A stretch of 64,000 nucleotides of DNA from Oopsacas minuta. Taxonomy: Eukaryota > Animalia > Porifera. The stretch lies in assembly GCA_024704765.1 (NCBI GenBank), contig JAKMXF010000222.1, positions 1,740,400-1,804,399 of the forward strand, written 5' to 3'. This document shows positions 1,975 through 15,165 of the stretch, piece by piece; position 1 is the first letter of the stretch; each line of letters opens with the position of its first letter. The position numbers were made by a program, and so were the translations under genes. Below the pieces are notes generated by a model. The model did no database searches. It saw nothing but the letters and a program-made list of their open reading frames with translations, and had not been told where the DNA came from.

Positions 1975-4900
1975 TCAAGAAACAGACTCAGATAAAAGTA
2001 ACTCTAGATGATCCAAGAACTTACTCCTTTCCTCAAGTTTAACCTCTATTATACATGGATCTAGTTGATCAGTGATAGCCTCAGCATCCAACCGCTCGCT
2101 GGTGTATTTAAACGCTCTCCCTAAGTCGTTCTTGTTGTCATCAGATGCGATAGGAGGGAGGCCCAGGAGGAGACAGTATCCCTGTGGATGATAAGAGGGA
2201 GCAGACAGAACAAAGGGTAGATTACGTGATCTTTTGCTAAGTAAGCTCCAGGAGTGTCTAATGAAGAGCGCCAGCCTCCGGAGTACAAGGGGGGTGGAGA
2301 GGAGACGCACTCCTGGAGTAGATTCATCTAAACATGCGTACATAAATGTTCCAAGGCAGATGACAAGCCTACGGTCCATACAGCTCTGTATCTACGGGAA
2401 TATTATACAATACAATCCACATTGTAAAGTTCTTAAACAATCCTGTATTTATAGCTAGTGAGAATAGCAATACACTAATGGATTGGTAGATAATTATATA
2501 ATTACAGTAATACTTACAAATCGTTAACTTCGCATTGATGTTTACAGCAATAAATTAATTAGGATACATGCCGTAACTCTGATAATCACATGGTGGATAT
2601 AGACATGCTCTTAACTAAGAATTCGAAAGAATTGGCAGGCTATTTCTCGCGGAAAGCATGATTAAATTTAAAATACTCCTCTTCTATTATTTGCATTAAA
2701 TTTCGAGATCTATATACTTTTGATTAATATTATAATATATAAAATTGTAAATCATTCACACACATTTTTGCGGTGAATGATTGCATTCTCGTAAAATTCC
2801 TGTCATAATTAAATAAATATTCACTGTAAGTTGTACCTTACCTGAGCGCGCATCAAAGATTGTACAATCTTAGCTTGTTCTATTCCTTGAAGTACTAGGC
2901 GCATGCTATCTCTTGCTAGAGCATCTTGTGCTATCAAAAAGTTATTACTTGAGAAATCAGTTTCTGTAGTAGTGCTAGAAGAGGGAGTTTCGTTCTCAGT
3001 ATTTCGTGTTGATTCAATGAGTGCAGCACAAGCTATGGCCATGTCAGCAGCAGAGAGCTTAGCTCTGTATCCATAAGCAGCATTGAAGGAGCCATAAGTA
3101 AGGTCGGATAGACCATACTTACTAGAAAGCTTCTCAAACAGAGACGGAACTTTCTCCCTCAATTGGAAATCCATAGCAGAGTACTTCTGTTGACTCTCTG
3201 TTATAGGTAGACCCATATCAGCTAGACACTCCAGCATGCGGTCTCTGCCTTTCTGGGTCCAGAGACGGAATCTACACGTAGTGTAGTCTGAACTGATCAT
3301 GCTGTCAAAAAAGGTCCAATGGCGATGAAGACAGAGTTTGAGCTCGTTTGAGAAAGAGAGTCTCAGGCCGTGTTCAGGAGCCCCACTGCTTCCGCTTGCT
3401 CCTCCGCTATCGGTTGAGTCTCTAGAGGACAGAGTAGAGGTGAAATCTATATTATTAAATCTCAATTGTTGTTTGTCTGTCTGTTTGTTTGTCCGTTGTT
3501 AAGGAAAGGATTTACGGTATGCAATTTTGAAATAATCGCCTAACTATGTATTTATCGTGTTTATCAAGGAAGTAAATAGAATTCAATAAAACTTCACTAA
3601 ATATATCGCACATGCTGAATCCGATTTTCACACTTTTGGATTAATCATATGTAAATTTATTGTTGTATGAATATAAAGTAAACAAATTATCCAAATCTCA
3701 AAATATACGTACAGGCTTGCTCTAAACGACTACCCAGGGGTAACTACGCTGAATCCGAATTTCGCAAGTTTCTCATATGTAAATTTGTTGTTGTTTTTAT
3801 GATTATACAGTAAACAAATTGTTGAAATATTAATTTATCAATTCAATTTTGCAATTTTAGACTTTGCTAAATTCTAGGCACGAAGTGCCGAGTTCCATGC
3901 GAACACAAACTTTTCGCAACCCCGCAGCGTGAGCAAGCGAACCGGCTCGTGTATTAGAAAGTTCCAGAATAGTAAACAACTTTTAAAGCTTAGGGTTATT
4001 ATAAAAGAGACGAACAATCATTTAATCAAAATAAGAACTTGCGATAACAAGAGTGATACAGAGAAGCATTCTCGAAGCGATAATTGAAATATCCAAAATG
4101 GTCGTTCTGAAGTATTCTCCGAGGAGATGGAAGATAAGATACTTAATTTCCAATTATGTGAATACTGATATCCAAGGTTGCAACCGAATAGTTAAATATT
4201 CGGTTGCAACCTTGGATTAATCATTCGTATTTAAAAATTAAATCTAAACATCATAGTGCAGTGTAAATTTGCATGTATTAACTACATATCTGCAATAGGA
4301 ATCTACTGCTATACTGCTTTTTAGCTAATTGTACAATGAACTAAATTCGGTAGTTAACTGCAACAGAACCAAAGATACCTGAATTTATTATGTCTAGCTA
4401 CATGATGTTGCAACTGCTGTACTTCTGATACATACTTCTCCTTACCCACACGCTGATGCAAATACTGATCTGTTAGACCTATGATACCCCACCAAAGTAC
4501 CTGAGGACCATCTTTACTCAGTTTCCATGCTGTGTCATACAACACAAGAGAACAACAGGTGTCATAATAGGAGAACTCGTAGTAACGGAATAGCAGATCC
4601 TCTCTCTTGTGTTCCCATTCTCTCCTCTTACGCCTACCAGCTCCTGGACCTCTACGTTGTCTCTTGGTTCTTGGTTCTAACGAATCTTCCTCTACATCTA
4701 GCTCAGAGTCAGAGGGAGCTGAGGAGGAGGATATGGGCTCTGGTTCTCCTCTTTCTTCATTTCGGTTTATCTGAAAAATATAATTAACTTCTTAAACACA
4801 AGAACAGCTGTTACTTTTATTACAAACGGAGAAGATTCAAAAGTGCCAGGTCTCCCAAAAATCATAAAAAATTATCACTTTTACTAGAATGAATACTAAA

Positions 4901-5858
4901 AGTTATCATTTCAACTATCAAGTATGCAACTTATCAATTTCTGAGTTGCTCTATAAACCAATGTTCTCAACCAATTTTATACAATTACTCCTTGATGAAG
5001 TGACATTACATCTGATCCCCCTCGCTAATCCGAACAGCACTATTTCAATTACAAAATATTCTCGTTCTGATTAGTAAAATGCATAGAAACAATACTATAA
5101 GATTTAGAAATTTTCGAAAGTTGTACAAAAGATGACAAGGCTTCGGAGCTTCTAACATGTGTAATAGTATTATGTATTCGTCCGCAGTAGAATTGGATAT
5201 AAGTAGTTCTTTTTGAAATTTTAGAATATTCCAAAGGTTGCATAATTTTAGGCCCTGTTAGGATTAGTGAGGTTATACATTGCGCATATAAGATTCAAAA
5301 AGCCCCAAGCTAGTACACAGAATAGTACTTTTGACTCATAGAAATAATTTCGTTTTGGATAAATAAATGTATCCAGAAACTTCTAGTAAAGTGCCTGGTT
5401 GAGAACTATAACCTATACTACTAATTAGATTATATATAATTACGAGAGCATACTTCATCAAGCTTTGGAATGTTTACTGTATCCCCTTCCCTGATAACTA
5501 TCTTCACTTGGTCAGATCCGTAGACATTGTCTAAATCGAGTGGTCTGTGGCTGTCTATCACGAATATTGGCAAAAGTGGATTTTCTGTGAGTGACAGTGC
5601 TTCCTGAAGAGGTGTTACAGCACCACAATTGATAGTGACAACGGAAGTAGCTTGAGAATGATGTTTCTGGAAAGCATCAGTTAGATCTTGCAATGAGGTG
5701 ACTGGTATCAGTGTGTACATAACTCCATCTGCTTGTAACAGAATTTGTAAGATTTTGCTAGCACACAAACTGTCTACATCGTTTGCAGCTAGGATTAGAA
5801 CTCGGCCCCGTTTCAATACTTGATAGAAATTCTGCTTCAGGTTGTCTGAAATGAGCAT
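1975..5858 (-). CDS. CDC45: Cell division control protein 45 (CMG helicase component), about 597 aa; exons 5858-5454, 4770-4379, 3421-2842, 2391-1975
   Basis: Collinear CDC45 motifs: DVDSLCASKILQ, INCGA, IDSHRP, LWWGIIGLTDQ, LHRHW, FRLWTQKG..L..MGLP, NDLGRAF, IEVKLEERSKFLD. All introns are GT-AG and the total of 1794 nt is in frame. Confidence 0.95.
3446..3949 (+). mobile_element. Non-autonomous Helitron, family A, in CDC45 intron 2
   Basis: A|TCTATATTATTAAATCTCAA 5' end, GTTT/GTCT microsatellite, internal GATTAATCATATG repeats, GC-rich 3' end ...GAGCAAGCGAACCGGCTCG|T; five homologous copies in the window. Confidence 0.8.
4170..4217. repeat. Perfect 21-bp palindrome with a 6-nt loop
   Basis: ATCCAAGGTTGCAACCGAATA-gttaaa-TATTCGGTTGCAACCTTGGAT; a related arm TATTCGGTTGCAACCTTG is at about 40691-40708. 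Confidence 0.85.
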
Positions 5859-6096
5859 CTGTAGCAAACAGAAAAATTCACTTGATTTAGCTATGAATAG
5901 CTATACCATACACGTAGTTCCATTTTACAACATATTTTGTTGAAATTTTATATATTTACCAGACATGTATGTAGTCAGCAGTAGTATATCTTGGAGCATG
6001 TTACTCAATTATCATAGATTAGCTGGAATGATGTAGCAATGCATCATTACTGAAATATTTGAATCAAATTACAAACAGTAAGATATCGGCTCGCTT

Positions 6097-6933: not shown

Positions 6934-9900
6934 CTATACAAGATGGTCCCATACTATCTTCATTGTACCAGGCTTGTCGGTAGGTTGAGTATCAGAATTG
7001 CAAGCATCCAGATTGTTATCTGTTTGATTAGAGTTGTTGGTAGAGACAATCTGCCCTGAAATTTCTTTAGATACAACATTGTCTTCCTCAGGAGCTATAG
7101 GATTAGTACTTACTTGTGAAGTACACGGATTGTCTGGGTAGTAGTCCTCGCTGAATTCATTAAAGTCTATCATGTATGTATTTTTGAGAAAAGGGTTTAC
7201 GCTAGGTCCTGTTACAGTAGCGGGAGCAGGACCGTAGAATAACTTAGTAGCTTCCTCTCTCTGTATTCTCTCTATTATCAGTTTAACCAGTTTACTATCA
7301 TTCTCGTTATCTCCTAGCTCAGTAGCTACATTGAGTGGAGGAGGTATATCTCCTCTCTTATGGTAAATAAGAATATAAGCTTCTTTAGTAGTGTCTGATT
7401 GTCCCTCCGGACTGATAACTTCAACTTTATGATCATTAAAATATCTCCACTCGTGAGTTGTCGGGTGCTTAGTGTAAGCAGTGTAGTGGCCACCGTGTAA
7501 CCCTCCGAAATGACAGACACAGCTGATTAAGTCGTATTCAGGGATATTTACTACTGAGGGTTCTGTGACGTCAGAAGAGAACACATAACTACTAAAATCA
7601 GCTGATGAGAAGGGGAAGTTGACAGGAGCATCTATCTTATCTCCTTGACTACCGTGGAATGCGAATCTCTTCAAATGTACAATCAGTGTTGTAGGGAGCT
7701 CCTTGATGCGGATAAACTTCTCTACTGATTTATTATCTTGACAAGTAGGACAGAACCACATATTCTCTGGACCAAGGATCTCCGATTGAGAGAAAGCGTC
7801 TAAACAGTCTGAAAGGGATAGAGGCTCCCTCCTCTCCTCCACCAGTGACACGTGCTCATTCTTCTGGCCAGCACTCTCAATAACAGAGTCAGGAATATCA
7901 CCAAAATCGACCTAAGTACATTGATAAAGAACTAATGAGGATATAAGTATAATTAATAATTCTTACAAAGATGCGATCTGATGGACGTATGATGACGTCA
8001 CTGAAATCTGCAGCAACTTGTCTGGTGTCCTGTAGATCATCAGTTAGACTAATTTGAAAGCTGTCATTCCTAAGAAATAGAGAAGGACGAGGTAGTTCTG
8101 TTACCCAAGAGAACAGCTGATACCCCTTCAAGTGGTTATCTACCTCCATTAGACAGGGGTGTGAGAATGTTTTGTACTTGTTATGTCTCAGATGATTATC
8201 AGTAGAGTCAGTAGGTAGTAAATGTCTGAATATCACAAATGCGGGTATCCTCTTGGTCTCAGGACAGTATGTCTGTAGCTGAGGATAGGGAATGAATGAG
8301 TCTGTAGTAGTAGCTTCTGAGCATACAGGACATGGTGTATCACCTGATTCAGTCACTCGTGAACAGTTCAGACTAAGACATGTCTCACAGAGGGTACATC
8401 CACAAGTGGGGTGTACCAGGAGATCAGTGTCTTGCATGTCTTCAAGACAGATAGCACAGGAGTGGTAGGATAGAGATGCTGCATTAACAGAGGGATTAGT
8501 CTTGTCTGTTTGTTCAGACGGTACATGTTGCATCTCTGTGGTAGTACTCACTACTCCATTGAGACCAGATGCCAGAGGTTTCTTAAGAGCTGACTCATTA
8601 GCAGGACTAGATACTCTCTCTCCCATCTCTAGACTACTAGATGTAGTAACCTTCAACTCTATAGCGTAGACAGATCTAAAGTCATCTTTTATGTAAGAGA
8701 CAAGCAAGGCATCTTGGAGTAGTCGTTGAGGAGCTTTCCCTCCAACTTCCACTATGGCTACATTTTCAGGTGAAATATCAAGATTAATCAGCTGTAGCAG
8801 AGCTTTCTTAAGGTCTGCAACATTCTGGTTCTTGTATACAGTTACCAGACACTCTGTCACTGAGATTAGAGTCCCGTCAGCTGCTAGAGAATCATTTTTT
8901 GAGTGTACAGGGTTCAAAGGACACCACGTTATCTTGAACTAAAATATGAAGCGTTAATAATATATTATGTATTATATTATAAGGCCACTGTTAGTGAAAA
9001 CTTGTTTCAGCTCCACGGCCCGCATTAAGTTTACCTGATGCATGAATATTGTCATATTTCACAACGAACATATCTTGAAGTAGAGTCATTGAAATTCTTG
9101 CATGAATTGGCCGCTTTGTATTATGAAAACCTCATAAAAATAATCAGATAACGATGATAAAATGGCGCCAAATGGATATCATGTGGAGTATAATCGAAAC
9201 CTGTTTCTCATTATTAACAGGGAATAATACAAGGATTATAACTTACCTGTCTCTCAAACCCCCTGGGGAGAGGAACAGAGAGAAAGAAGAACGGTTCCTC
9301 CAATACAGTCTCATTTCTACACTCACAACAAGTAACTTTTGTAGAGAATTTGCCTTTAAAAGTAGTCTCAACTACAGTATCACCATTAAGTGTAGTATAT
9401 TGCTCTAATCTGGGAGATTTCCTAGAAGGTTCAGTAGAATCAGAGTCATCTCGTAGGCTAGATTGTCTCACTCGTCCTGACCTGAGTACAACATTCATGT
9501 GGTCAAGAAACACACCCATAAACTCCTGACAGTCATGAGCCTTATACCCTCTGAAAGGGTGGAAAGCTTCTCCTAGGAGAGCTTTGAATGCAGTTGGTGT
9601 TAGATACGTGTATTTACCCGACCAGACAGAGCGAGCTAGTTTAGAGTAAACATTGAAAAGTAGAGTGTCAACATGTTCCAGTATCTTGTCCAGATCCTTG
9701 CTGTCAAGTTCTTCTGTTACTCCTGGACAATGCTCTAACACTGATGGAACCACATTAGTGAAATACTCAGTTAGTTGTGGTACACTTAATAGAGCCTGTA
9801 TCCCAGCATTCATGTAGCAGGTGTTCCCTAGGTTACGCAGTCCGCACACTCCAGGATATGCGTTCACATCTTCCAGGAAGGGGGGATCAGATTGTTCAGA

Positions 9901-10077
9901 AAGGAGAACATTCTCTACTCTACCCGTGTCCATTACGGGAGGTTCGTGTAAAATGTCGTGAGCAACTTTTCCAATCTCTTCGTCAGTCATCTGTGGCTTG
10001 AAATCTTCTGGGCTTAGTCCAGGTGCGTAATTGCTCTCATTCCACTCGTTATCTTCGCTTGGAGAGTCCATAGCCAT
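6934..10077 (-). CDS. Ubiquitin-specific protease (peptidase C19, USP4/11/15/19-like catalytic core) with internal Ubl-like and C4C4 RING insert, about 926 aa; exons 10077-9247, 8938-7967, 7911-6934
   Basis: Cys box GLRNLGNTCYMNA, Asp box HDCQEF, Zn ligands CCEC and CPTC, LPTTLIVHLKRF, His box CHFGGLHGGHYTAY, WRYFND. RING CAIC-x14-CGC-x2-CETC-x15-CPVC at 8458-8321. Two GT-AG introns keep the frame (2781 nt). Confidence 0.92.
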
Positions 10078-13000
10078 CACGAGAGTATGGCAAATGTAAT
10101 GTGATGCTAATAAATCTGTAACTAAATAAGAATTGATAAACTTCGAATTCGGATTTTAGTGTTTCCTAAGTTATGATTATATAATTATGGGAACGACGTG
10201 TTCAACTTCGGGATTATTAAATATGGTCGTTTGCCAACATTTAAGCCATAGACGTGATGTTTTAAGAAAGCAGAAAGTAAACTGGAGTGGTGAGGCTCAC
10301 TATTTACGTATCTGAGTTATATACAAACATAAATTCACTTATCCCCATACTGTCCATACATATATCTAGACCTACACAAATAAGTAGAATAGTAATAAAT
10401 GTAAGGTCCTAATCAGAAAATTAGCAATTCTAGTTATCTACTATTCACTACTGTATGCCAATTATATAAATCCTGAGTTGTGTTGTCAATGAACTCGTCG
10501 ATGATATGACATACATACAGGATGCTAACGTCATTGCAGCATCTTCATGAACAGTCAGTACAGAAGTGGTTCAAAAATTCTGTTGAGTTTGTGAGTTCGA
10601 AAGTATGTGTATTCTGCCGCAACATACTGAAGACTCTTAATTAACCTTACATGTCGTCACAGGTAGACCGTAGACACACATATAGCACATAAAACATATT
10701 GAGATTGGGTAGCAGAAACTTCAGTGACTCTTCCTTAGTAAACGCTTTTCTAAGAGTAAAAATCTCTTTACTCATGCATTTATAGAGGAAACCAGTTATT
10801 TCTCGCAAACAAAATTGCAAAAGTTTACTAAGAAATTTATCTCCATTATAGCATTCTGCGAGCGTAGCGTGTCGTCTTCCAAACTTGAATACAACAGGAT
10901 TATTGTATGACATTGGGGTGACTTATTGCTTATTGGCAATTTGTTAATTATAAGCAGGGATGGAAACAGCTAAGCTCACGAAAAATTGTGGCTGTTAATA
11001 GCTATCGCTAAATTTCCATTTCATCCTTATCTCATGCCCGTAGGAGACGGTACGGTTGGTCAGGTTTCAACTGGTGTCACAGTGAATAGTGTTCTCCGTG
11101 AATAATGTTGCCCAAACATTATCCACTAGGGATTATGGTCATGGGCGTAGCAGCAACGGGGATTTTAAGGGGCACAGTCTCTAAATCTATCCAGTTTCCC
11201 ACTATCCCTTAATATAATCAATGTATTGAATAATTTGAGGGGACTATTGATAAATATCTATCCGTGAGATTTGTTTAAGATCCATTGAATTTAGCCAATT
11301 TATTAATTACAATTGATGGCTATACTCTATAGGATATCTACACATCAAAATGACGCAAAGGTGTTCATTTCGTTATGGGGCACTATAATAAATTCAATTT
11401 TCCCCAAAATTTGAGAAGGTAAAATGGGAAGTGAGATTGAAAAATTTTGATGAATAGATTTTACTAAAATTTGATGTCCTCCTCTTATAATGCATCATAA
11501 TAGATTAATTCCTTGGAGGTCAACAACAGCAATACAACATCTATGATGTATGCCTCAGAACGTTGAAGTGTACTACCTAATTTTACTTGGATAAAATCAA
11601 ATGTTTGAATGCTCTCATGGGCTTTGTTTCTAGCCCTCTAAGCGCTATAGTTAAAAAAAGAGCTGCTCCATAACACCAATATTTACATATGTGAAGAGCA
11701 TTAAAGTAGCGGCACTCCATTTTTGAAGGAGTGAACACACTGGAGTGCACTCGGTCAAAACCCTCGAACCCTCCCTTTTCGGCGCCTATGCATGATAACT
11801 GTGCGTTTTACCCGATTAACCAGAGCAATTTAATTATCACTATTCGTATGGTTCTCTTTCCAAATGCAACTGTGGATCTATTAAGCGGAATCTACTAAAA
11901 CATATATGCAGAGCATTAAGCGCTCCTCATTTTTTGGACCGCGCTCTGGTCCGAACTCCCACCTCCGCTCATTACTCAAAAAAGGAGCGCACTCCGGATA
12001 CCAGTCCAGGACAAATGGAACGCACTCCAATCGCGGTCTTTTTATTCTTTCAGATTTACATTAGATTTGTATTTTAAGTAATCAGGATTGAATTGTACAT
12101 TCGGGAAATTATTAAATCGGCAAAGTCAAACCATTTCAATAAATTGTGAATTATACAAAAGTGTCCCAGCATCCACTTTTTATAGCAATAATACTGAATT
12201 TTATGCAAGATAACCCTTGGTCAGATAAAAACTGTGAAAGGAGATTTGATGCTCATTTATCATTTCTTACTATAAATATATTCTTCCATACTAATATTTG
12301 TTAGCGGGTAATTAATTATTGACACTTGTTTGATTAAAATCATCTTTAGATTTTGAATATTGACCTTTCAACCACTCGTTTACGGATAGTTGCGAAATTA
12401 TATTAATTTTAATTCTGTTCTAACTGTTAATCAGAATGAATAATGACCGCGGGAGCTGTTTAAAATCGGATAAAATTAAATTTAACTATTTTTTGATTAA
12501 TCTTATGTATATTTATGAACTATACAATATTTTGTATTGCTTAATACATTTACTGGTAAGTGGTAATTATGAGATGTCTGCTAATTGTATTTCTATATAG
12601 AAATATTCGAATGAGTTTTGACGCGGCCAGTTTACTTAGAAAGACTTAATTTTGTGCATCATGAAACTGTCTAGCAAGTAATTACTCTATTGGATCATAT
12701 GATTTTTGAAAGATACTGGTTATAACTTATGGCAGCTCTAGGCATCAAAGAATTCACTGAAAAATTTCTACTTTCTCATCTTTCTGATAAATCTCATTGA
12801 ATCAGCGTAAAAGCTACCCGAAACTTCATTTAAGATATATTTGAGCATAGTAATTCAATTTGTACTCATTCCGGTGTAAGGCTAAAACAATTATCCAATC
12901 TCTTTCACTTCTTCCATATTTAGGAGATTTTCGAATTATACTAATATTTCGTATGTTGATTTGTAAGTTTATCGGATGTCTGATGAAACATCAAGATTGG

Positions 13001-15165
13001 TACTACAGTACACCATCAATAATCCGAACAGCACTCTTGTAATTGCAAAATTAAGAGCTAATAATGAGTTTGTTTCCGATGCACAACTGAGTTTAGGTTT
13101 AGAAGAACTATATAGAATATTCACTATAGGTTTAGATTTTGCACTATTTTGCACGATTTATAGCGTAAAGAATAAACATAAATTGATGAGCTATTTCTAA
13201 GATCATCAAAAATTGATAACCTAAAATTTATGCAAAATTTTTTATAGCAAATAATCTAACCTCTGCTAAATGATTACATAATTTAATCCCAAATCAGAAT
13301 AATTTAGTAAATAAAGAAATAAAAATGTTAAAAATAATATTATTTCTCATTTAAATCATTAACAAACAAATTATTTAAAAGATAACATACATACATATTC
13401 TATAATTTTGGTTTCAGTGGTGCTTCTAAATCCTATATCGTCCGAAATCAATTTCAGTCTATTACTACTAATCTAACAGTATATACAGAATTTCCAAGGA
13501 CAGAGAAAATATTGGGATTGACGGGGATGATAAACAAGCAGTGGCGACATCAAAAGAGTCGTAGGGGCAGAAATAGGGACCTCTAAACAATTTCTGCGAC
13601 TACTGAGGGTTCGCTGATTGTTTTACCACAAAGTTCATGGGTGTGTCTATACTAGTAAAATGTATAATCCTACTATTTTGGCTACTCTTATCTATAAACC
13701 TGCTGTGGATTGCCTTCTTCATTTCGATCTGTCACGATCCAAAGTAAAAACTTGGTGCAGCCCAATGTAAACAGTGTATACGTATACTGTTTCATTTGTA
13801 GATATACCTCTATTTGTTTTAAGTAAGAGAAAATCCCATCTGAAAATTAAAGAAAACAGAGCAGAAAGTGACTTATACACAGTCCAAATGAAAAAGAATT
13901 TAACAACTCGACGGGAAAATTCTTGATTTGTCAAATTTATTATGAATTAACTTTAGGAATATTAAAAATTGAAGACTATTCTGACTATATTGTGAAATCA
14001 AGCATTTGGCCCAAGGGGTAACTAGCAATGGAGGCAGAGGAGACAGTCAAAATTGACTTACTTATTTGTATTTCTGAATTGATATACCACCTCAAGCATG
14101 AGTTTTAAAATGATTCGATCACTATCAGAACAGTTGTATATCCAATAACATAGCAATTAAACATAATATACCATACTTTCCAACTGTCACGATTATTGCT
14201 AGACGTCCCGCATTTTCAAACATGTATGAAGCTAATGTCCCGCCGAAACTTGCAAAAAGCTCAAATTGTCCCCCTTGATATGGTGTAGTTTAATGCATTT
14301 ATGTTACTGCCAGCGATGTCCCGCTAAATCTCACATTCAGTCCTGCTCTTTTCTTCACTCGATTTGGCAAGTAACTAAGTACGTATCAAACAAACTTTTC
14401 AATTTGTATTATTATATACATTAGAGTAAAACAGATGACATATTTATAAGTTCACACATAAAAACATTCTGCATCCGCAAAACTAACTTATTTCATGTAC
14501 AATATATTTTGATTCTGCAAAAGAATACCTTTCTCAACAGCATAATTACAAATTGAATTTTTGTGAATAAATGAATAGGACATGTGTTGAATGGTGAAAT
14601 TTGGAGAAAAGTATGTTTTAACCGACTTCTACTGCATTGCATTATTCACATGTGAAGAAGTCGGGTACAAAAGGACATAATCAAGAAATATTTAATTTGC
14701 AGTTCTTCAGTTTAACCACTCGGACTAAGAGCTAGCGTGAGCAAAATAAAATTTCTTAGAAATTATGATGGCTACATTTTTATTCCTAGTATTATTGTTC
14801 TGTGTCCTGTTAGAATAATTGTTGAATGAATTGCACTCGAATACCTCTGATAATGATTCGTGGCTGTTCTGATTTAAAGCTACAATGAAAATATTCCTCG
14901 AATGGACAGTGCTTTCAATATGTAGACGATTTACAGACTTATTTTCACTTATCAACTACATATGTGGACCTCTATATGTGCTAAATCATTGGAACGATAT
15001 ATTACGAGAATTTAAGTTTTTCTTTCGCATTTGATGATAACTATTTAAGTAAGCATATTGATATAACGGAGTATATTTCGACCTTATTTATACAGACGTA
15101 CAGCTCTGCGGAGAATATATATATATATATACATATACACGATTACACAAAGTAAATATATAACA

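What the first reader, a model, noticed from the sequence alone, without database searches (positions are those of the whole stretch)
6934..10077. Deubiquitinase with a C4C4 RING finger inside its catalytic domain (possible DUB/E3 ubiquitin editor)
Seen: one 3-exon gene encodes an intact USP (GNTCY Cys box, GGHY His box, FND Asp, split CxxC...CxxC zinc ribbon). Between the two zinc-ribbon halves lie a Ubl-like segment and C-x2-C-x14-C-x-C-x2-C-x2-C-x15-C-x2-C (8458-8321), all within one exon, so this is not a mis-join. Known: USP4/11/15 carry a Ubl at this insertion point and USP19 carries a MYND finger there; C4C4 RINGs such as CNOT4 are E3 ligases; A20 is the classic DUB/E3 hybrid but uses OTU plus ZnF. 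I know of no characterised USP with a RING at this site. Inference: an E3-DUB editing enzyme, or a RING reused as an E2 or substrate adaptor. Caveat: the residue after the last Cys is Ser (CPVCS), not the usual linchpin Arg, while the E2-contact Ile (CAIC) and Pro (CPVC) are kept.
Basis: partly seen in the sequence, partly recalled or inferred. Interest (0 to 1): 0.8.

Follow-up and report, generated by a model that had tools for sequence, protein, structure and literature searches.

The report
Deubiquitinase with a built-in RING finger
An expressed gene of this animal (a glass sponge, according to earlier scan notes) encodes an intact-looking ubiquitin-removing enzyme that carries, inside its catalytic domain, a RING finger of the type used by ubiquitin-adding enzymes. 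The same design is conserved in every one of the 120 closest relatives, all invertebrates, and I found no paper on it.

Summary
Three phase-0 exons on the minus strand (10077-9247, 8938-7967, 7911-6934) encode a 926-aa USP. It has a catalytic Cys87/His743/Asp761 and a split zinc ribbon. Contigs of one public run skip exactly both introns and cover exon 2.

The insert is not a stray finger. It folds as a USP7-like double ubiquitin-like unit with a RING between the two halves. The finger matches RING profiles and folds as a RING/U-box. No PHD, MYND or B-box appears among the best structural matches.

It is not unique to this genome. The same finger sits at the same place in a USP family found from sponges and jellyfish to sea urchins, insects, ticks, molluscs and amphioxus. 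No vertebrate is among the 120 best hits. Database names are "uncharacterized" or inconsistent, and I found no paper on it.

The RING is the most constrained part of the protein (dN/dS about 0.02 against a related species).

Two corrections:
- The family-invariant ligands are C2-H-C5.
- The linchpin position is variable.

E2 recruitment (a DUB/E3 editor) is the best-supported reading but remains inference.

The parts
6934..10077 (-). Whole coding region of the 926-aa USP-RING gene (3 exons: 10077-9247, 8938-7967, 7911-6934 including the stop)
   Evidence: Sequence and in-frame translation. Both junctions are seen in contigs of run X4. The same three-exon gene lies next to CDC45 in a related species (L001/L002).
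9247..9849 (-). USP catalytic domain, first half (aa 77-277): Cys box GNTCYMN with Cys87 (9828-9808) and the first zinc-ribbon pair C250/C253 (9330-9319)
   Evidence: Pfam UCH E 2.2e-24. Closest solved chains are USP15, USP11 and USP4, E 6e-31 to 1e-24. The Cys box is invariant in the family alignment.
8645..8938 (-). Ubl-a (aa 278-375), the first ubiquitin-like fold of the insert
   Evidence: AlphaFold pLDDT above 90 for most of it. Ubiquitin, RA and USP7-UBL matches reach Z up to 13. The motif AEV..h..R.L.D is conserved in the family.
8480..8644 (-). Disordered, fast-evolving linker (aa 376-430)
   Evidence: pLDDT below 50. dN/dS 0.42 and 53% identity to the ortholog. Its length varies greatly across the family.
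8285..8467 (-). RING finger (aa 435-495). Ligand span C438..C483 = 8458-8321. Family-invariant residues are C438, C441, H453, C456, C461, C464, C480, P481 and C483
   Evidence: Pfam RING families. Profile against PDB: RNF4 2.7e-8, TRIM32 4e-8. RING fold in AlphaFold with Foldseek and VIA-align. dN/dS 0.018.
7967..8272 (-). Ubl-b (aa 500-601), the second ubiquitin-like fold. It runs at constant length into the second half of the USP domain
   Evidence: USP7 UBL4-5 aligns over the whole insert, Z 13.0 with 162 residues. RING-to-His-box spacing is constant across 23 full-length relatives. The window protein lacks the CSRC..HCxGC zinc knuckle that most relatives carry here.
7345..7911 (-). USP catalytic domain, second half (aa 602-790): second zinc-ribbon pair C655/C658 (7752-7741), His box GGHYTAY with His743 (7494-7474), and YFNDHK with Asp761 (7443-7426)
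   Evidence: Pfam UCH E 2e-28. USP15, USP11 and USP4 at E 2e-30. Conserved in the family.
6937..7344 (-). Low-complexity C-terminal tail (aa 791-926)
   Evidence: No Pfam match. dN/dS 0.39.

Best explanation
Shown. This is a real, expressed, selectively maintained gene for a USP4/11/15-class deubiquitinase with all catalytic residues. The loop between the two halves of its finger-tip zinc ribbon has been replaced by a module Ubl-a / flexible linker / RING / Ubl-b. The RING-Ubl-b part is joined at fixed length to the second half of the catalytic domain. The gene belongs to an old animal family that keeps this design.

Inferred. The RING is a working E2-docking site, so the protein brings an E2 (probably charged with ubiquitin) next to a deubiquitinase active site. 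That would make one polypeptide that both writes and erases ubiquitin. It could be an editing enzyme that trims one chain type and builds another. It could also be a ligase that removes its own auto-ubiquitination in cis, as separate E3-DUB pairs do in trans. The missing conserved linchpin suggests E2~Ub activation is weak or needs a second element, such as the neighbouring Ubl or dimerisation.
For: - Gene and splicing.
- Intact USP motifs, conserved family-wide.
- RING by sequence: (43 of 57 members match zf-RING_2).
- RING by fold: all 50 best matches in each search are RING, SP-RING or U-box. RNF4 gives Z 6.9, rmsd 2.0 over 55 residues.
- E2-contact positions are nearly invariant in 57 sequences: Ile440 (I52/V5), Leu465 (L/I/V/M 56 of 57), Pro481 (57 of 57).
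- The RING is the most constrained segment. dN/dS is 0.018, against 0.05-0.08 for the catalytic halves and 0.4 for the linker and tail.
- Among the differences listed for a second relative's contigs (40 of 87 shown), the RING has only two, both synonymous.
- All 120 best relatives of an amphioxus member carry the finger, from sponge to cephalochordate.
- Spacing from the RING to the catalytic His box is constant.
Against:
- The residue after the last Cys (the linchpin that locks E2~Ub in many RING E3s) is Ser here. Across the family it is S/R/L/G/N with no consensus.
- The canonical fourth ligand is missing in about half of members, so the second zinc site is atypical.
- Pfam scores are marginal: 26.9 against 25.2 bits on the isolated piece, and below cut-off in exon context.
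- Structure matches have modest scores (best Foldseek E 9e-3, best Z 7.5), as expected for a 60-residue domain.
- Model coordinates and PAE were not available to me. I could not check whether the E2 face is exposed or buried against Ubl-b or the USP body.
Confidence: 0.5

Rival explanations
1. The RING is a non-catalytic module. It folds as a RING but serves as a protein-interaction, dimerisation or autoregulatory element of the deubiquitinase. It might pair with another RING protein as BARD1, BMI1 or MDMX do, or dock substrates, or control access of ubiquitin to the fingers as the USP4 insert Ubl does. It would not itself promote ubiquitin transfer.
For: - The linchpin position is not conserved.
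- The canonical ligand 4 is dispensable and an unusual invariant His453 is present.
- Conserved flanking aromatics (Trp/Tyr435, Phe492) occupy positions where dimeric RINGs such as RNF4 and the TRIMs form their interface.
- The RING is embedded between two Ubl folds like the regulatory USP7 UBL4-5 unit.
Against: Inactive partner RINGs usually lose the E2-contact residues, whereas Ile440, Leu465 and Pro481 are kept across very distantly related animal groups, sponges to amphioxus. The very strong constraint on the whole finger fits either reading.
Confidence: 0.36
2. RBR-like relay. A linchpin-less RING holds E2~Ub in the open state, as RING1 of RBR ligases does, and hands ubiquitin to the USP catalytic Cys87. 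The USP thioester intermediate is then resolved onto a lysine, so the protease runs in reverse as a ligase.
For: - There is no conserved linchpin.
- The RING is joined at fixed length to the second half of the domain that bears the nucleophilic Cys.
- RBR RING1 domains are among the profile hits: RNF144A at 2e-5 and RNF31/HOIP at 1.5e-4.
Against: This is purely speculative. There is no IBR or Rcat-like element. Canonical RINGs (RNF4, TRIM) match better than RBR RING1. No geometry is available. USP thioesters are normally hydrolysed.
Confidence: 0.05
3. Artefact: a mis-joined gene model, a skipped exon, or a chance cysteine pattern.
For: None found.
Against: - Both junctions are present in transcript-like contigs, and exon 2 is covered throughout.
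- The finger and both Ubl folds lie in one exon.
- The same gene occurs in related species and in all 120 closest relatives.
Confidence: 0.01

Closest known systems
USP4 / USP11 / USP15 (DUSP-Ubl USPs)
   Same: These are the closest catalytic domains by sequence (E 6e-31 to 2e-29). They also carry a Ubl domain inserted between the zinc-ribbon halves (established knowledge; the Ubl-a motif is seen).
   Different: There is no N-terminal DUSP-Ubl: only 76 residues precede the Cys box, with no Pfam DUSP hit. The insert also holds a RING and a second Ubl. Database names of family members are inconsistent (USP4-, 6-, 9-, 10-, 11-, 15-, 19-, 32-, 43-like), so no orthology to a vertebrate USP is evident.
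USP19 (MYND finger in the catalytic-domain insert) and CYLD (B-box inside the USP domain)
   Same: Both are precedents for a cross-brace-type zinc finger embedded in a USP catalytic domain (established knowledge).
   Different: Here the finger is a RING by profile and by fold. No MYND or B-box structure is among the best 50 matches in either search, and only one of 57 members has a weak MYND-like Pfam hit. MYND and the CYLD B-box are not E2-binding domains.
USP7 C-terminal UBL4-5 di-Ubl unit
   Same: This is the best structural match to the whole insert (4yoc_C, Z 13.0, rmsd 2.8, 162 residues). In USP7 the C-terminal Ubl region activates the catalytic domain (title of PDB entry 2ylm, listed; otherwise established knowledge).
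   Different: Here the unit lies inside the catalytic domain, not at the C-terminus. It has a RING and a disordered linker between the two Ubl folds. Sequence similarity is negligible (Pfam USP7_C2 E 0.15).
RNF4 and TRIM-type RING E3 ligases (TRIM5, TRIM21, TRIM32)
   Same: These are the best sequence-profile and fold matches to the finger. The shared motifs are CxIC(L/M)(E/D), CG(H/C)xxCxxC(L/I) and CPxC.
   Different: There is no SIMs, B-box or coiled-coil context. The linchpin Arg is not conserved. Ligand 4 is variable and there is an extra invariant His three residues before ligand 3.
A20/TNFAIP3 and other DUB/E3 hybrids or pairs (e.g. BRAP, which has a RING plus a ZnF-UBP; USP7-MDM2 and USP15-TRIM25 as separate proteins)
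   Same: The concept matches: ubiquitin removal and ubiquitin addition are coupled in one protein or complex (established knowledge).
   Different: A20 uses an OTU protease and a zinc finger (ZnF4) rather than a USP and a RING. BRAP has no catalytic USP domain. The pairs are separate polypeptides.

Membership tests
USP (peptidase C19) deubiquitinases | Pfam UCH domain above the gathering score | tested here: met
   86.9 and 100.1 bits for the two halves, against a cut-off of 23.9.
USP (peptidase C19) deubiquitinases | Catalytic Cys box, His box and Asp/Asn present | tested here: met
   Cys87 in GNTCYMN, His743 in GGHYTAY and Asp761 in FND. All are conserved in 23 full-length relatives.
USP (peptidase C19) deubiquitinases | Hydrolysis of ubiquitin conjugates | not testable with these tools
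   Needs a Ub-AMC or di-ubiquitin assay.
RING-type E3 ligase domains | Eight Cys/His ligands with cross-brace spacing | tested here: met
   The window has C-x2-C-x14-C-x-C-x2-C-x2-C-x15-C-x2-C. At family level the invariant set is C2-H-C5, and canonical ligand 4 is present in only about half of members.
RING-type E3 ligase domains | Match to RING profile HMMs | tested here: met
   zf-RING_UBOX scores 26.9 bits against a 25.2 cut-off on the isolated piece, but 23.0 in exon context. 43 of 57 family members match zf-RING_2 at E up to 0.01. The family profile hits RNF4 at 2.7e-8.
RING-type E3 ligase domains | RING (beta-beta-alpha cross-brace) fold | tested here: met
   The AlphaFold model has mean pLDDT 79.7, and about 91-95 over most of the ligand-bearing core. 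All 50 best matches are RING, SP-RING or U-box, by Foldseek and by exhaustive VIA-align. This is a prediction, not a solved structure.
RING-type E3 ligase domains | E2-contact residues: hydrophobic residue after ligand 1, hydrophobic residue on the central helix, Pro after ligand 7 | tested here: met
   Ile440, Leu465 and Pro481 are nearly invariant in 57 sequences.
RING-type E3 ligase domains | Linchpin Arg/Lys/Asn after the last ligand | tested here: not met
   Ser484 in the window. Among 89 family members scored for this position the residue is S28, R21, L11, G10, N9. It is not a universal requirement for RING E3 activity, but it lowers the claim.
RING-type E3 ligase domains | E2 binding and E2-dependent ubiquitin transfer | not testable with these tools
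   Needs E2-panel assays.
USP4/11/15 subfamily | N-terminal DUSP-Ubl unit | tested here: not met
   Exon 1 gives only UCH hits, and only 76 residues precede the catalytic domain. Transcript-like coverage ends by about 10193.
USP19-type (MYND in insert) | MYND zinc finger | tested here: not met
   The window has no MYND Pfam hit. One of 57 members has a weak zf-C6H2 hit. No MYND structure is among the best matches.
RBR ligases | RING1-IBR-Rcat triad | tested here: not met
   Only one RING is present, and there is no IBR Pfam hit. The CSRC..HCxGC knuckle of relatives has four Cys and one His only, and it is absent from the window.

The most novel reading that the evidence does not exclude
The linchpin-less RING works like RING1 of an RBR ligase. 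It holds E2~Ub open and passes ubiquitin to the USP catalytic cysteine, so that a deubiquitinase fold acts as a thioester-forming ligase (a 'RING-USP relay'). This would be a ligase mechanism present early in animal evolution and apparently missing from vertebrates.
Probability: 0.05. Interest if true: 0.92.

Novelty: new variant of a known kind. Interest (0 to 1): 0.62.

Why it matters
Ligases and deubiquitinases are known to work in pairs, but almost always as separate proteins. A20 is the textbook exception, and it uses unrelated domains.

Here a RING and a complete USP are fused at a fixed geometry. The fusion is kept in animal groups as distant as sponges, cnidarians, arthropods, molluscs, echinoderms and amphioxus, and the RING is the most constrained part. 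No vertebrate, fly or nematode sequence was among the best 120 relatives, which would explain why nobody seems to have studied the family.

It offers a natural, compact system for asking how writing and erasing of ubiquitin are coupled. It is also a 'Rosetta-stone' hint about which RING type (RNF4/TRIM-like) partners with USP4/11/15-class enzymes. If the RING proves non-catalytic, it is still a new way of regulating a USP from inside its finger domain.

Tried and rejected
- **Spliced protein.** The 926-aa spliced protein has no reference, so it could not be handed to the search or fold tools as one piece. The exons, all phase 0, were searched apart. I made no full-length model of the window protein.
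- **Word-index search.** Searching with a hemichordate member's RING-Ubl-b region found only three proteins, too insensitive to map the family. The exhaustive search and a full-length amphioxus query did the job.
- **ESM Atlas.** The search by features gave only sub-threshold leads, Ubl+RING-like clusters at 0.87-0.89.
- **First motif regex.** It missed 31 of 120 relatives. A profile search showed that all of them carry the finger with slightly different spacing, or have truncated gene models. 'RING lost in Hymenoptera' was therefore rejected.
- **Readings rejected.** MYND, PHD, B-box and RBR readings were considered and rejected. An upstream DUSP exon was looked for and not found.
- **Literature.** Seven of the eight literature searches, plus four papers read for this point, gave nothing on a USP with a RING. 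The library lacks most subscription journals, so this is not proof of absence.
- **Intron 1 repeat.** It has no inverted arms and no second copy in the window.
- **Zinc ligands.** I could not decide whether His453 or Cys458 binds zinc, because model coordinates are not exposed.
Full report
**1. The gene**

On the minus strand an ATG at 10077 opens a reading frame that continues through two GT..AG introns (9246-8939, 308 nt; 7966-7912, 55 nt) to a stop at 6936-6934. The three exons (10077-9247, 8938-7967, 7911-6934) are all phase 0 and give a 926-aa protein.

Public run X4 has no library type on record. Its contigs join 8938 to 9247 and 7911 to 7967 with CT..AC ends on the + strand. It has zero depth at the intron 2 positions checked, much lower depth across intron 1, and depth across the whole of exon 2. 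Depth stops by 10193. I therefore read X4 as RNA. Both junctions are confirmed, exon 2 is included, no exon-skipping joint was reported, and there is no sign of an upstream exon.

Runs X1 and X3 hold the locus as uninterrupted DNA and may be the source of the assembly. X5, a second organism, holds a diverged copy. Most of its laid contigs are 90-95% alike, and all listed indels fall in introns or the 3' UTR.

**2. The deubiquitinase**

- Pfam UCH matches both halves (E 2e-24 and 2e-28).
- The nearest solved chains are USP15, USP11 and USP4, then USP8 and USP2.
- The catalytic residues are Cys87 (GNTCYMN), His743 (GGHYTAY) and Asp761 (FND). The finger-tip zinc ribbon is C250/C253 and C655/C658.
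- These residues are conserved in 23 full-length relatives.
- Only 76 residues precede the catalytic domain and no DUSP domain is found, so this is not a USP4/11/15 orthologue in architecture.

**3. The insert**

Exon 2 (aa 278-601) lies between the two zinc-ribbon pairs. I modelled it with AlphaFold2 on a 26-sequence alignment. The result had mean pLDDT 78.8 and pTM 0.65, with disordered stretches at exon residues 12-23 and 107-148.

An exhaustive structure comparison gives USP7 UBL4-5 as the best match over the whole insert (4yoc_C, Z 13.0, rmsd 2.8, 162 residues). Many single ubiquitin-like folds match residues 1-97. The insert is therefore Ubl-a, a flexible linker, the finger, then Ubl-b.

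In 23 full-length relatives the distance from the finger to the end of the insert (about 107-110 aa) and on to the His box is almost constant. The part before the finger varies by hundreds of residues. RING-Ubl-b is thus a fixed unit continuous with the second half of the catalytic domain.

**4. Is the finger a RING?**

- **Pfam.** zf-RING_UBOX reaches 26.9 bits (cut-off 25.2) on the isolated 85-aa piece and 23.0 bits in exon context. zf-RING_2, zf-RING_5 and zf-C3HC4 follow below their cut-offs.
- **Family members.** Of 57 family fingers scanned singly, 43 match zf-RING_2 and 39 match zf-RING_UBOX at E up to 0.01.
- **Profile against PDB.** A profile of the 57 hits the RNF4 RING at 2.7e-8, TRIM32 at 4e-8 and TRIM5 at 2e-7, with 87 distinct chains at E up to 0.01. 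The 60 listed are RING proteins except one designed zinc-finger protein.
- **Fold.** The finger modelled alone has mean pLDDT 79.7, and about 91-95 over most of the ligand-bearing core. It has the strand-strand-helix order of a RING.
- **Structure searches.** The best 50 Foldseek matches are all RING or U-box domains, including TRIM21, Rad18, RING1B, RNF4, TRAF6, BRCA1 and TRIM25. The best 50 of an independent exhaustive search are likewise all RING, SP-RING or U-box, with RNF4 at Z 6.9 and rmsd 2.0 over 55 residues.

Scores are modest, as for any 60-residue domain.

**5. The family**

I searched 1.84 billion representative proteins exhaustively with exon 2. The search found 150 proteins at E up to 0.001, among them many 800-2000-aa proteins matched in mid-sequence. 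Those I scanned are USPs with the finger in the same place.

Source names place them in the following groups:
- a homoscleromorph sponge (Corticium)
- jellyfish and Hydra
- molluscs and a brachiopod
- hemichordates and echinoderms
- amphioxus
- chelicerates, crustaceans and insects

A full-length amphioxus member used as query returned 696 proteins at E up to 1e-10. The best 120 (E up to 1e-137) are all invertebrate animals, now including sea urchins, nemerteans and Hymenoptera. No vertebrate is among them.

All 120 carry the finger. Two of them have gene models that break off within it.

Names are 'uncharacterized protein', 'ubiquitinyl hydrolase 1', or contradictory automatic labels (USP4-, 6-, 9-, 10-, 11-, 15-, 19-, 32-, 43-like). 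This suggests the family has no recognised vertebrate orthologue.

I found no paper that mentions a USP with a RING, nor any of six locus names. The two evolutionary surveys of DUBs that I read start from the human set and would miss a family absent from vertebrates. The searchable library is incomplete, so 'undescribed' is provisional.

**6.

In a 26-sequence alignment chosen without reference to the finger, the invariant residues are C438, C441, H453, C456, C461, C464, C480, P481 and C483.

In a further set it is Cys in 44 and Gly in 42 of 89. It is Phe, Leu or Val in Hymenoptera.

The family pattern is therefore C-x2-C-x11-H-x2(-4)-C-x4-C-x2-C-xn-C-x2-C.

By homology to RNF4 and the TRIMs, C458 sits where their ligand-4 His sits. 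I infer that His453 can supply, or always supplies, the fourth ligand of the second zinc site. I could not test this because model coordinates are not exposed.

Most relatives also have a small CSRC-x4/5-HCxGC zinc knuckle in a loop of Ubl-b (88 of 89 tested). The window protein, its close orthologue and the Corticium protein lack it.

**7. Selection**

Contigs L001 and L002, from a marine metagenome assembly, carry the orthologue of a related species. It has the same three exons and the same CDC45 neighbour. Overall identity is 78% and dS is about 1.2, which is near saturation, so the ratios are rough.

| Segment | dN/dS |
|---|---|
| Whole protein | 0.11 |
| Catalytic halves | 0.05-0.08 |
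| Ubl-a | 0.08 |
| Linker | 0.42 |
| Tail | 0.39 |
| RING (67 of 70 residues identical) | 0.018 |

Forty of the 87 single-letter differences of organism B's contigs were shown. Of those that fall in coding sequence, 24 are synonymous and 12 are not. The two inside the RING are both synonymous.

**8. How it most likely works**

Shown: an expressed, constrained gene; an intact USP; a RING-fold finger flanked by two Ubl folds and joined at fixed length to the second half of the catalytic domain.

Inferred: the finger docks an E2. The three classical E2-contact positions are nearly invariant across the family: Ile after ligand 1, Leu/Ile on the central helix, and Pro after ligand 7. Non-catalytic partner RINGs tend to lose these residues.

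The protein would then bring E2~Ub next to a deubiquitinase site. It could edit chains, or act as a ligase that cleans itself in cis.

Against a strong stand-alone ligase:
- The linchpin position is Ser here and has no consensus in the family.
- Ligand 4 is atypical.

My estimates are:
- E2-recruiting editor: about 0.5
- Non-catalytic regulatory, adaptor or dimerisation RING: about 0.36
- RBR-like relay to the USP cysteine: about 0.05
- Artefact: about 0.01

**9. Organism**

Earlier notes of this scan call the genome the glass sponge Oopsacas minuta. I did not verify this. The window's 30-42% G+C (mostly 31-38%) and few, short introns agree with the published description: 36% G+C, 1.59 introns per gene, mean intron 341 bp (PMC10280926). 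If correct, sponges of two classes carry the family, which would place its origin at or before the last common ancestor of living animals.

**10. Verdict**

The finding is a member of a large, conserved, apparently unstudied USP-RING family: a new variant of known kinds of domain rather than a new kind of system.

Noticed in passing
window 8998-9116 (inside intron 1 of the USP gene): This is a short dispersed repeat. Summed contig depth rises about 5- to 25-fold here in the runs that hold the locus as DNA, and many contigs run on into unrelated sequence. It has no inverted arms and no second copy in the window. The orthologue's intron 1 is only about 48 nt, so this looks like a lineage-specific insertion.
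   Followed up: partly
window about 2800-5900, minus strand (e.g. ORF 5430-5867); L001 4994-5467, L002 4994-6135: The next gene downstream on the same strand is CDC45. The USP-RING/CDC45 neighbourhood is conserved in the related species' contigs.
   Followed up: partly
relatives, e.g. P0003 about 1120-1140 and P0004 about 930-950; missing in the window at about aa 566 (window about 8075): Most family members have a CSRC-x4/5-HCxGC zinc knuckle in a loop of Ubl-b (88 of 89 tested). The window protein, its orthologue and the sponge Corticium lack it. Either eumetazoans gained it or sponges lost it.
   Followed up: partly
Hymenopteran relatives, e.g. P0296 (Nasonia) 665-739 and P0272 (Formica) 692-766: The hymenopteran fingers have H-x4-C instead of H-x2-C, and Phe, Leu or Val at the canonical ligand-4 place. 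They keep the other eight invariant residues.
   Followed up: partly
public annotations of relatives: Automatic names for one and the same family range over USP4-, 6-, 9-, 10-, 11-, 15-, 19-, 32- and 43-like and 'uncharacterized protein'. The family has no consistent name or orthology assignment.
   Followed up: no
window 10100-15100: The stretch upstream of the USP gene has no long ORF on either strand and is AT-rich (30-37% G+C). That is unusually empty for a genome described as compact.
   Followed up: no
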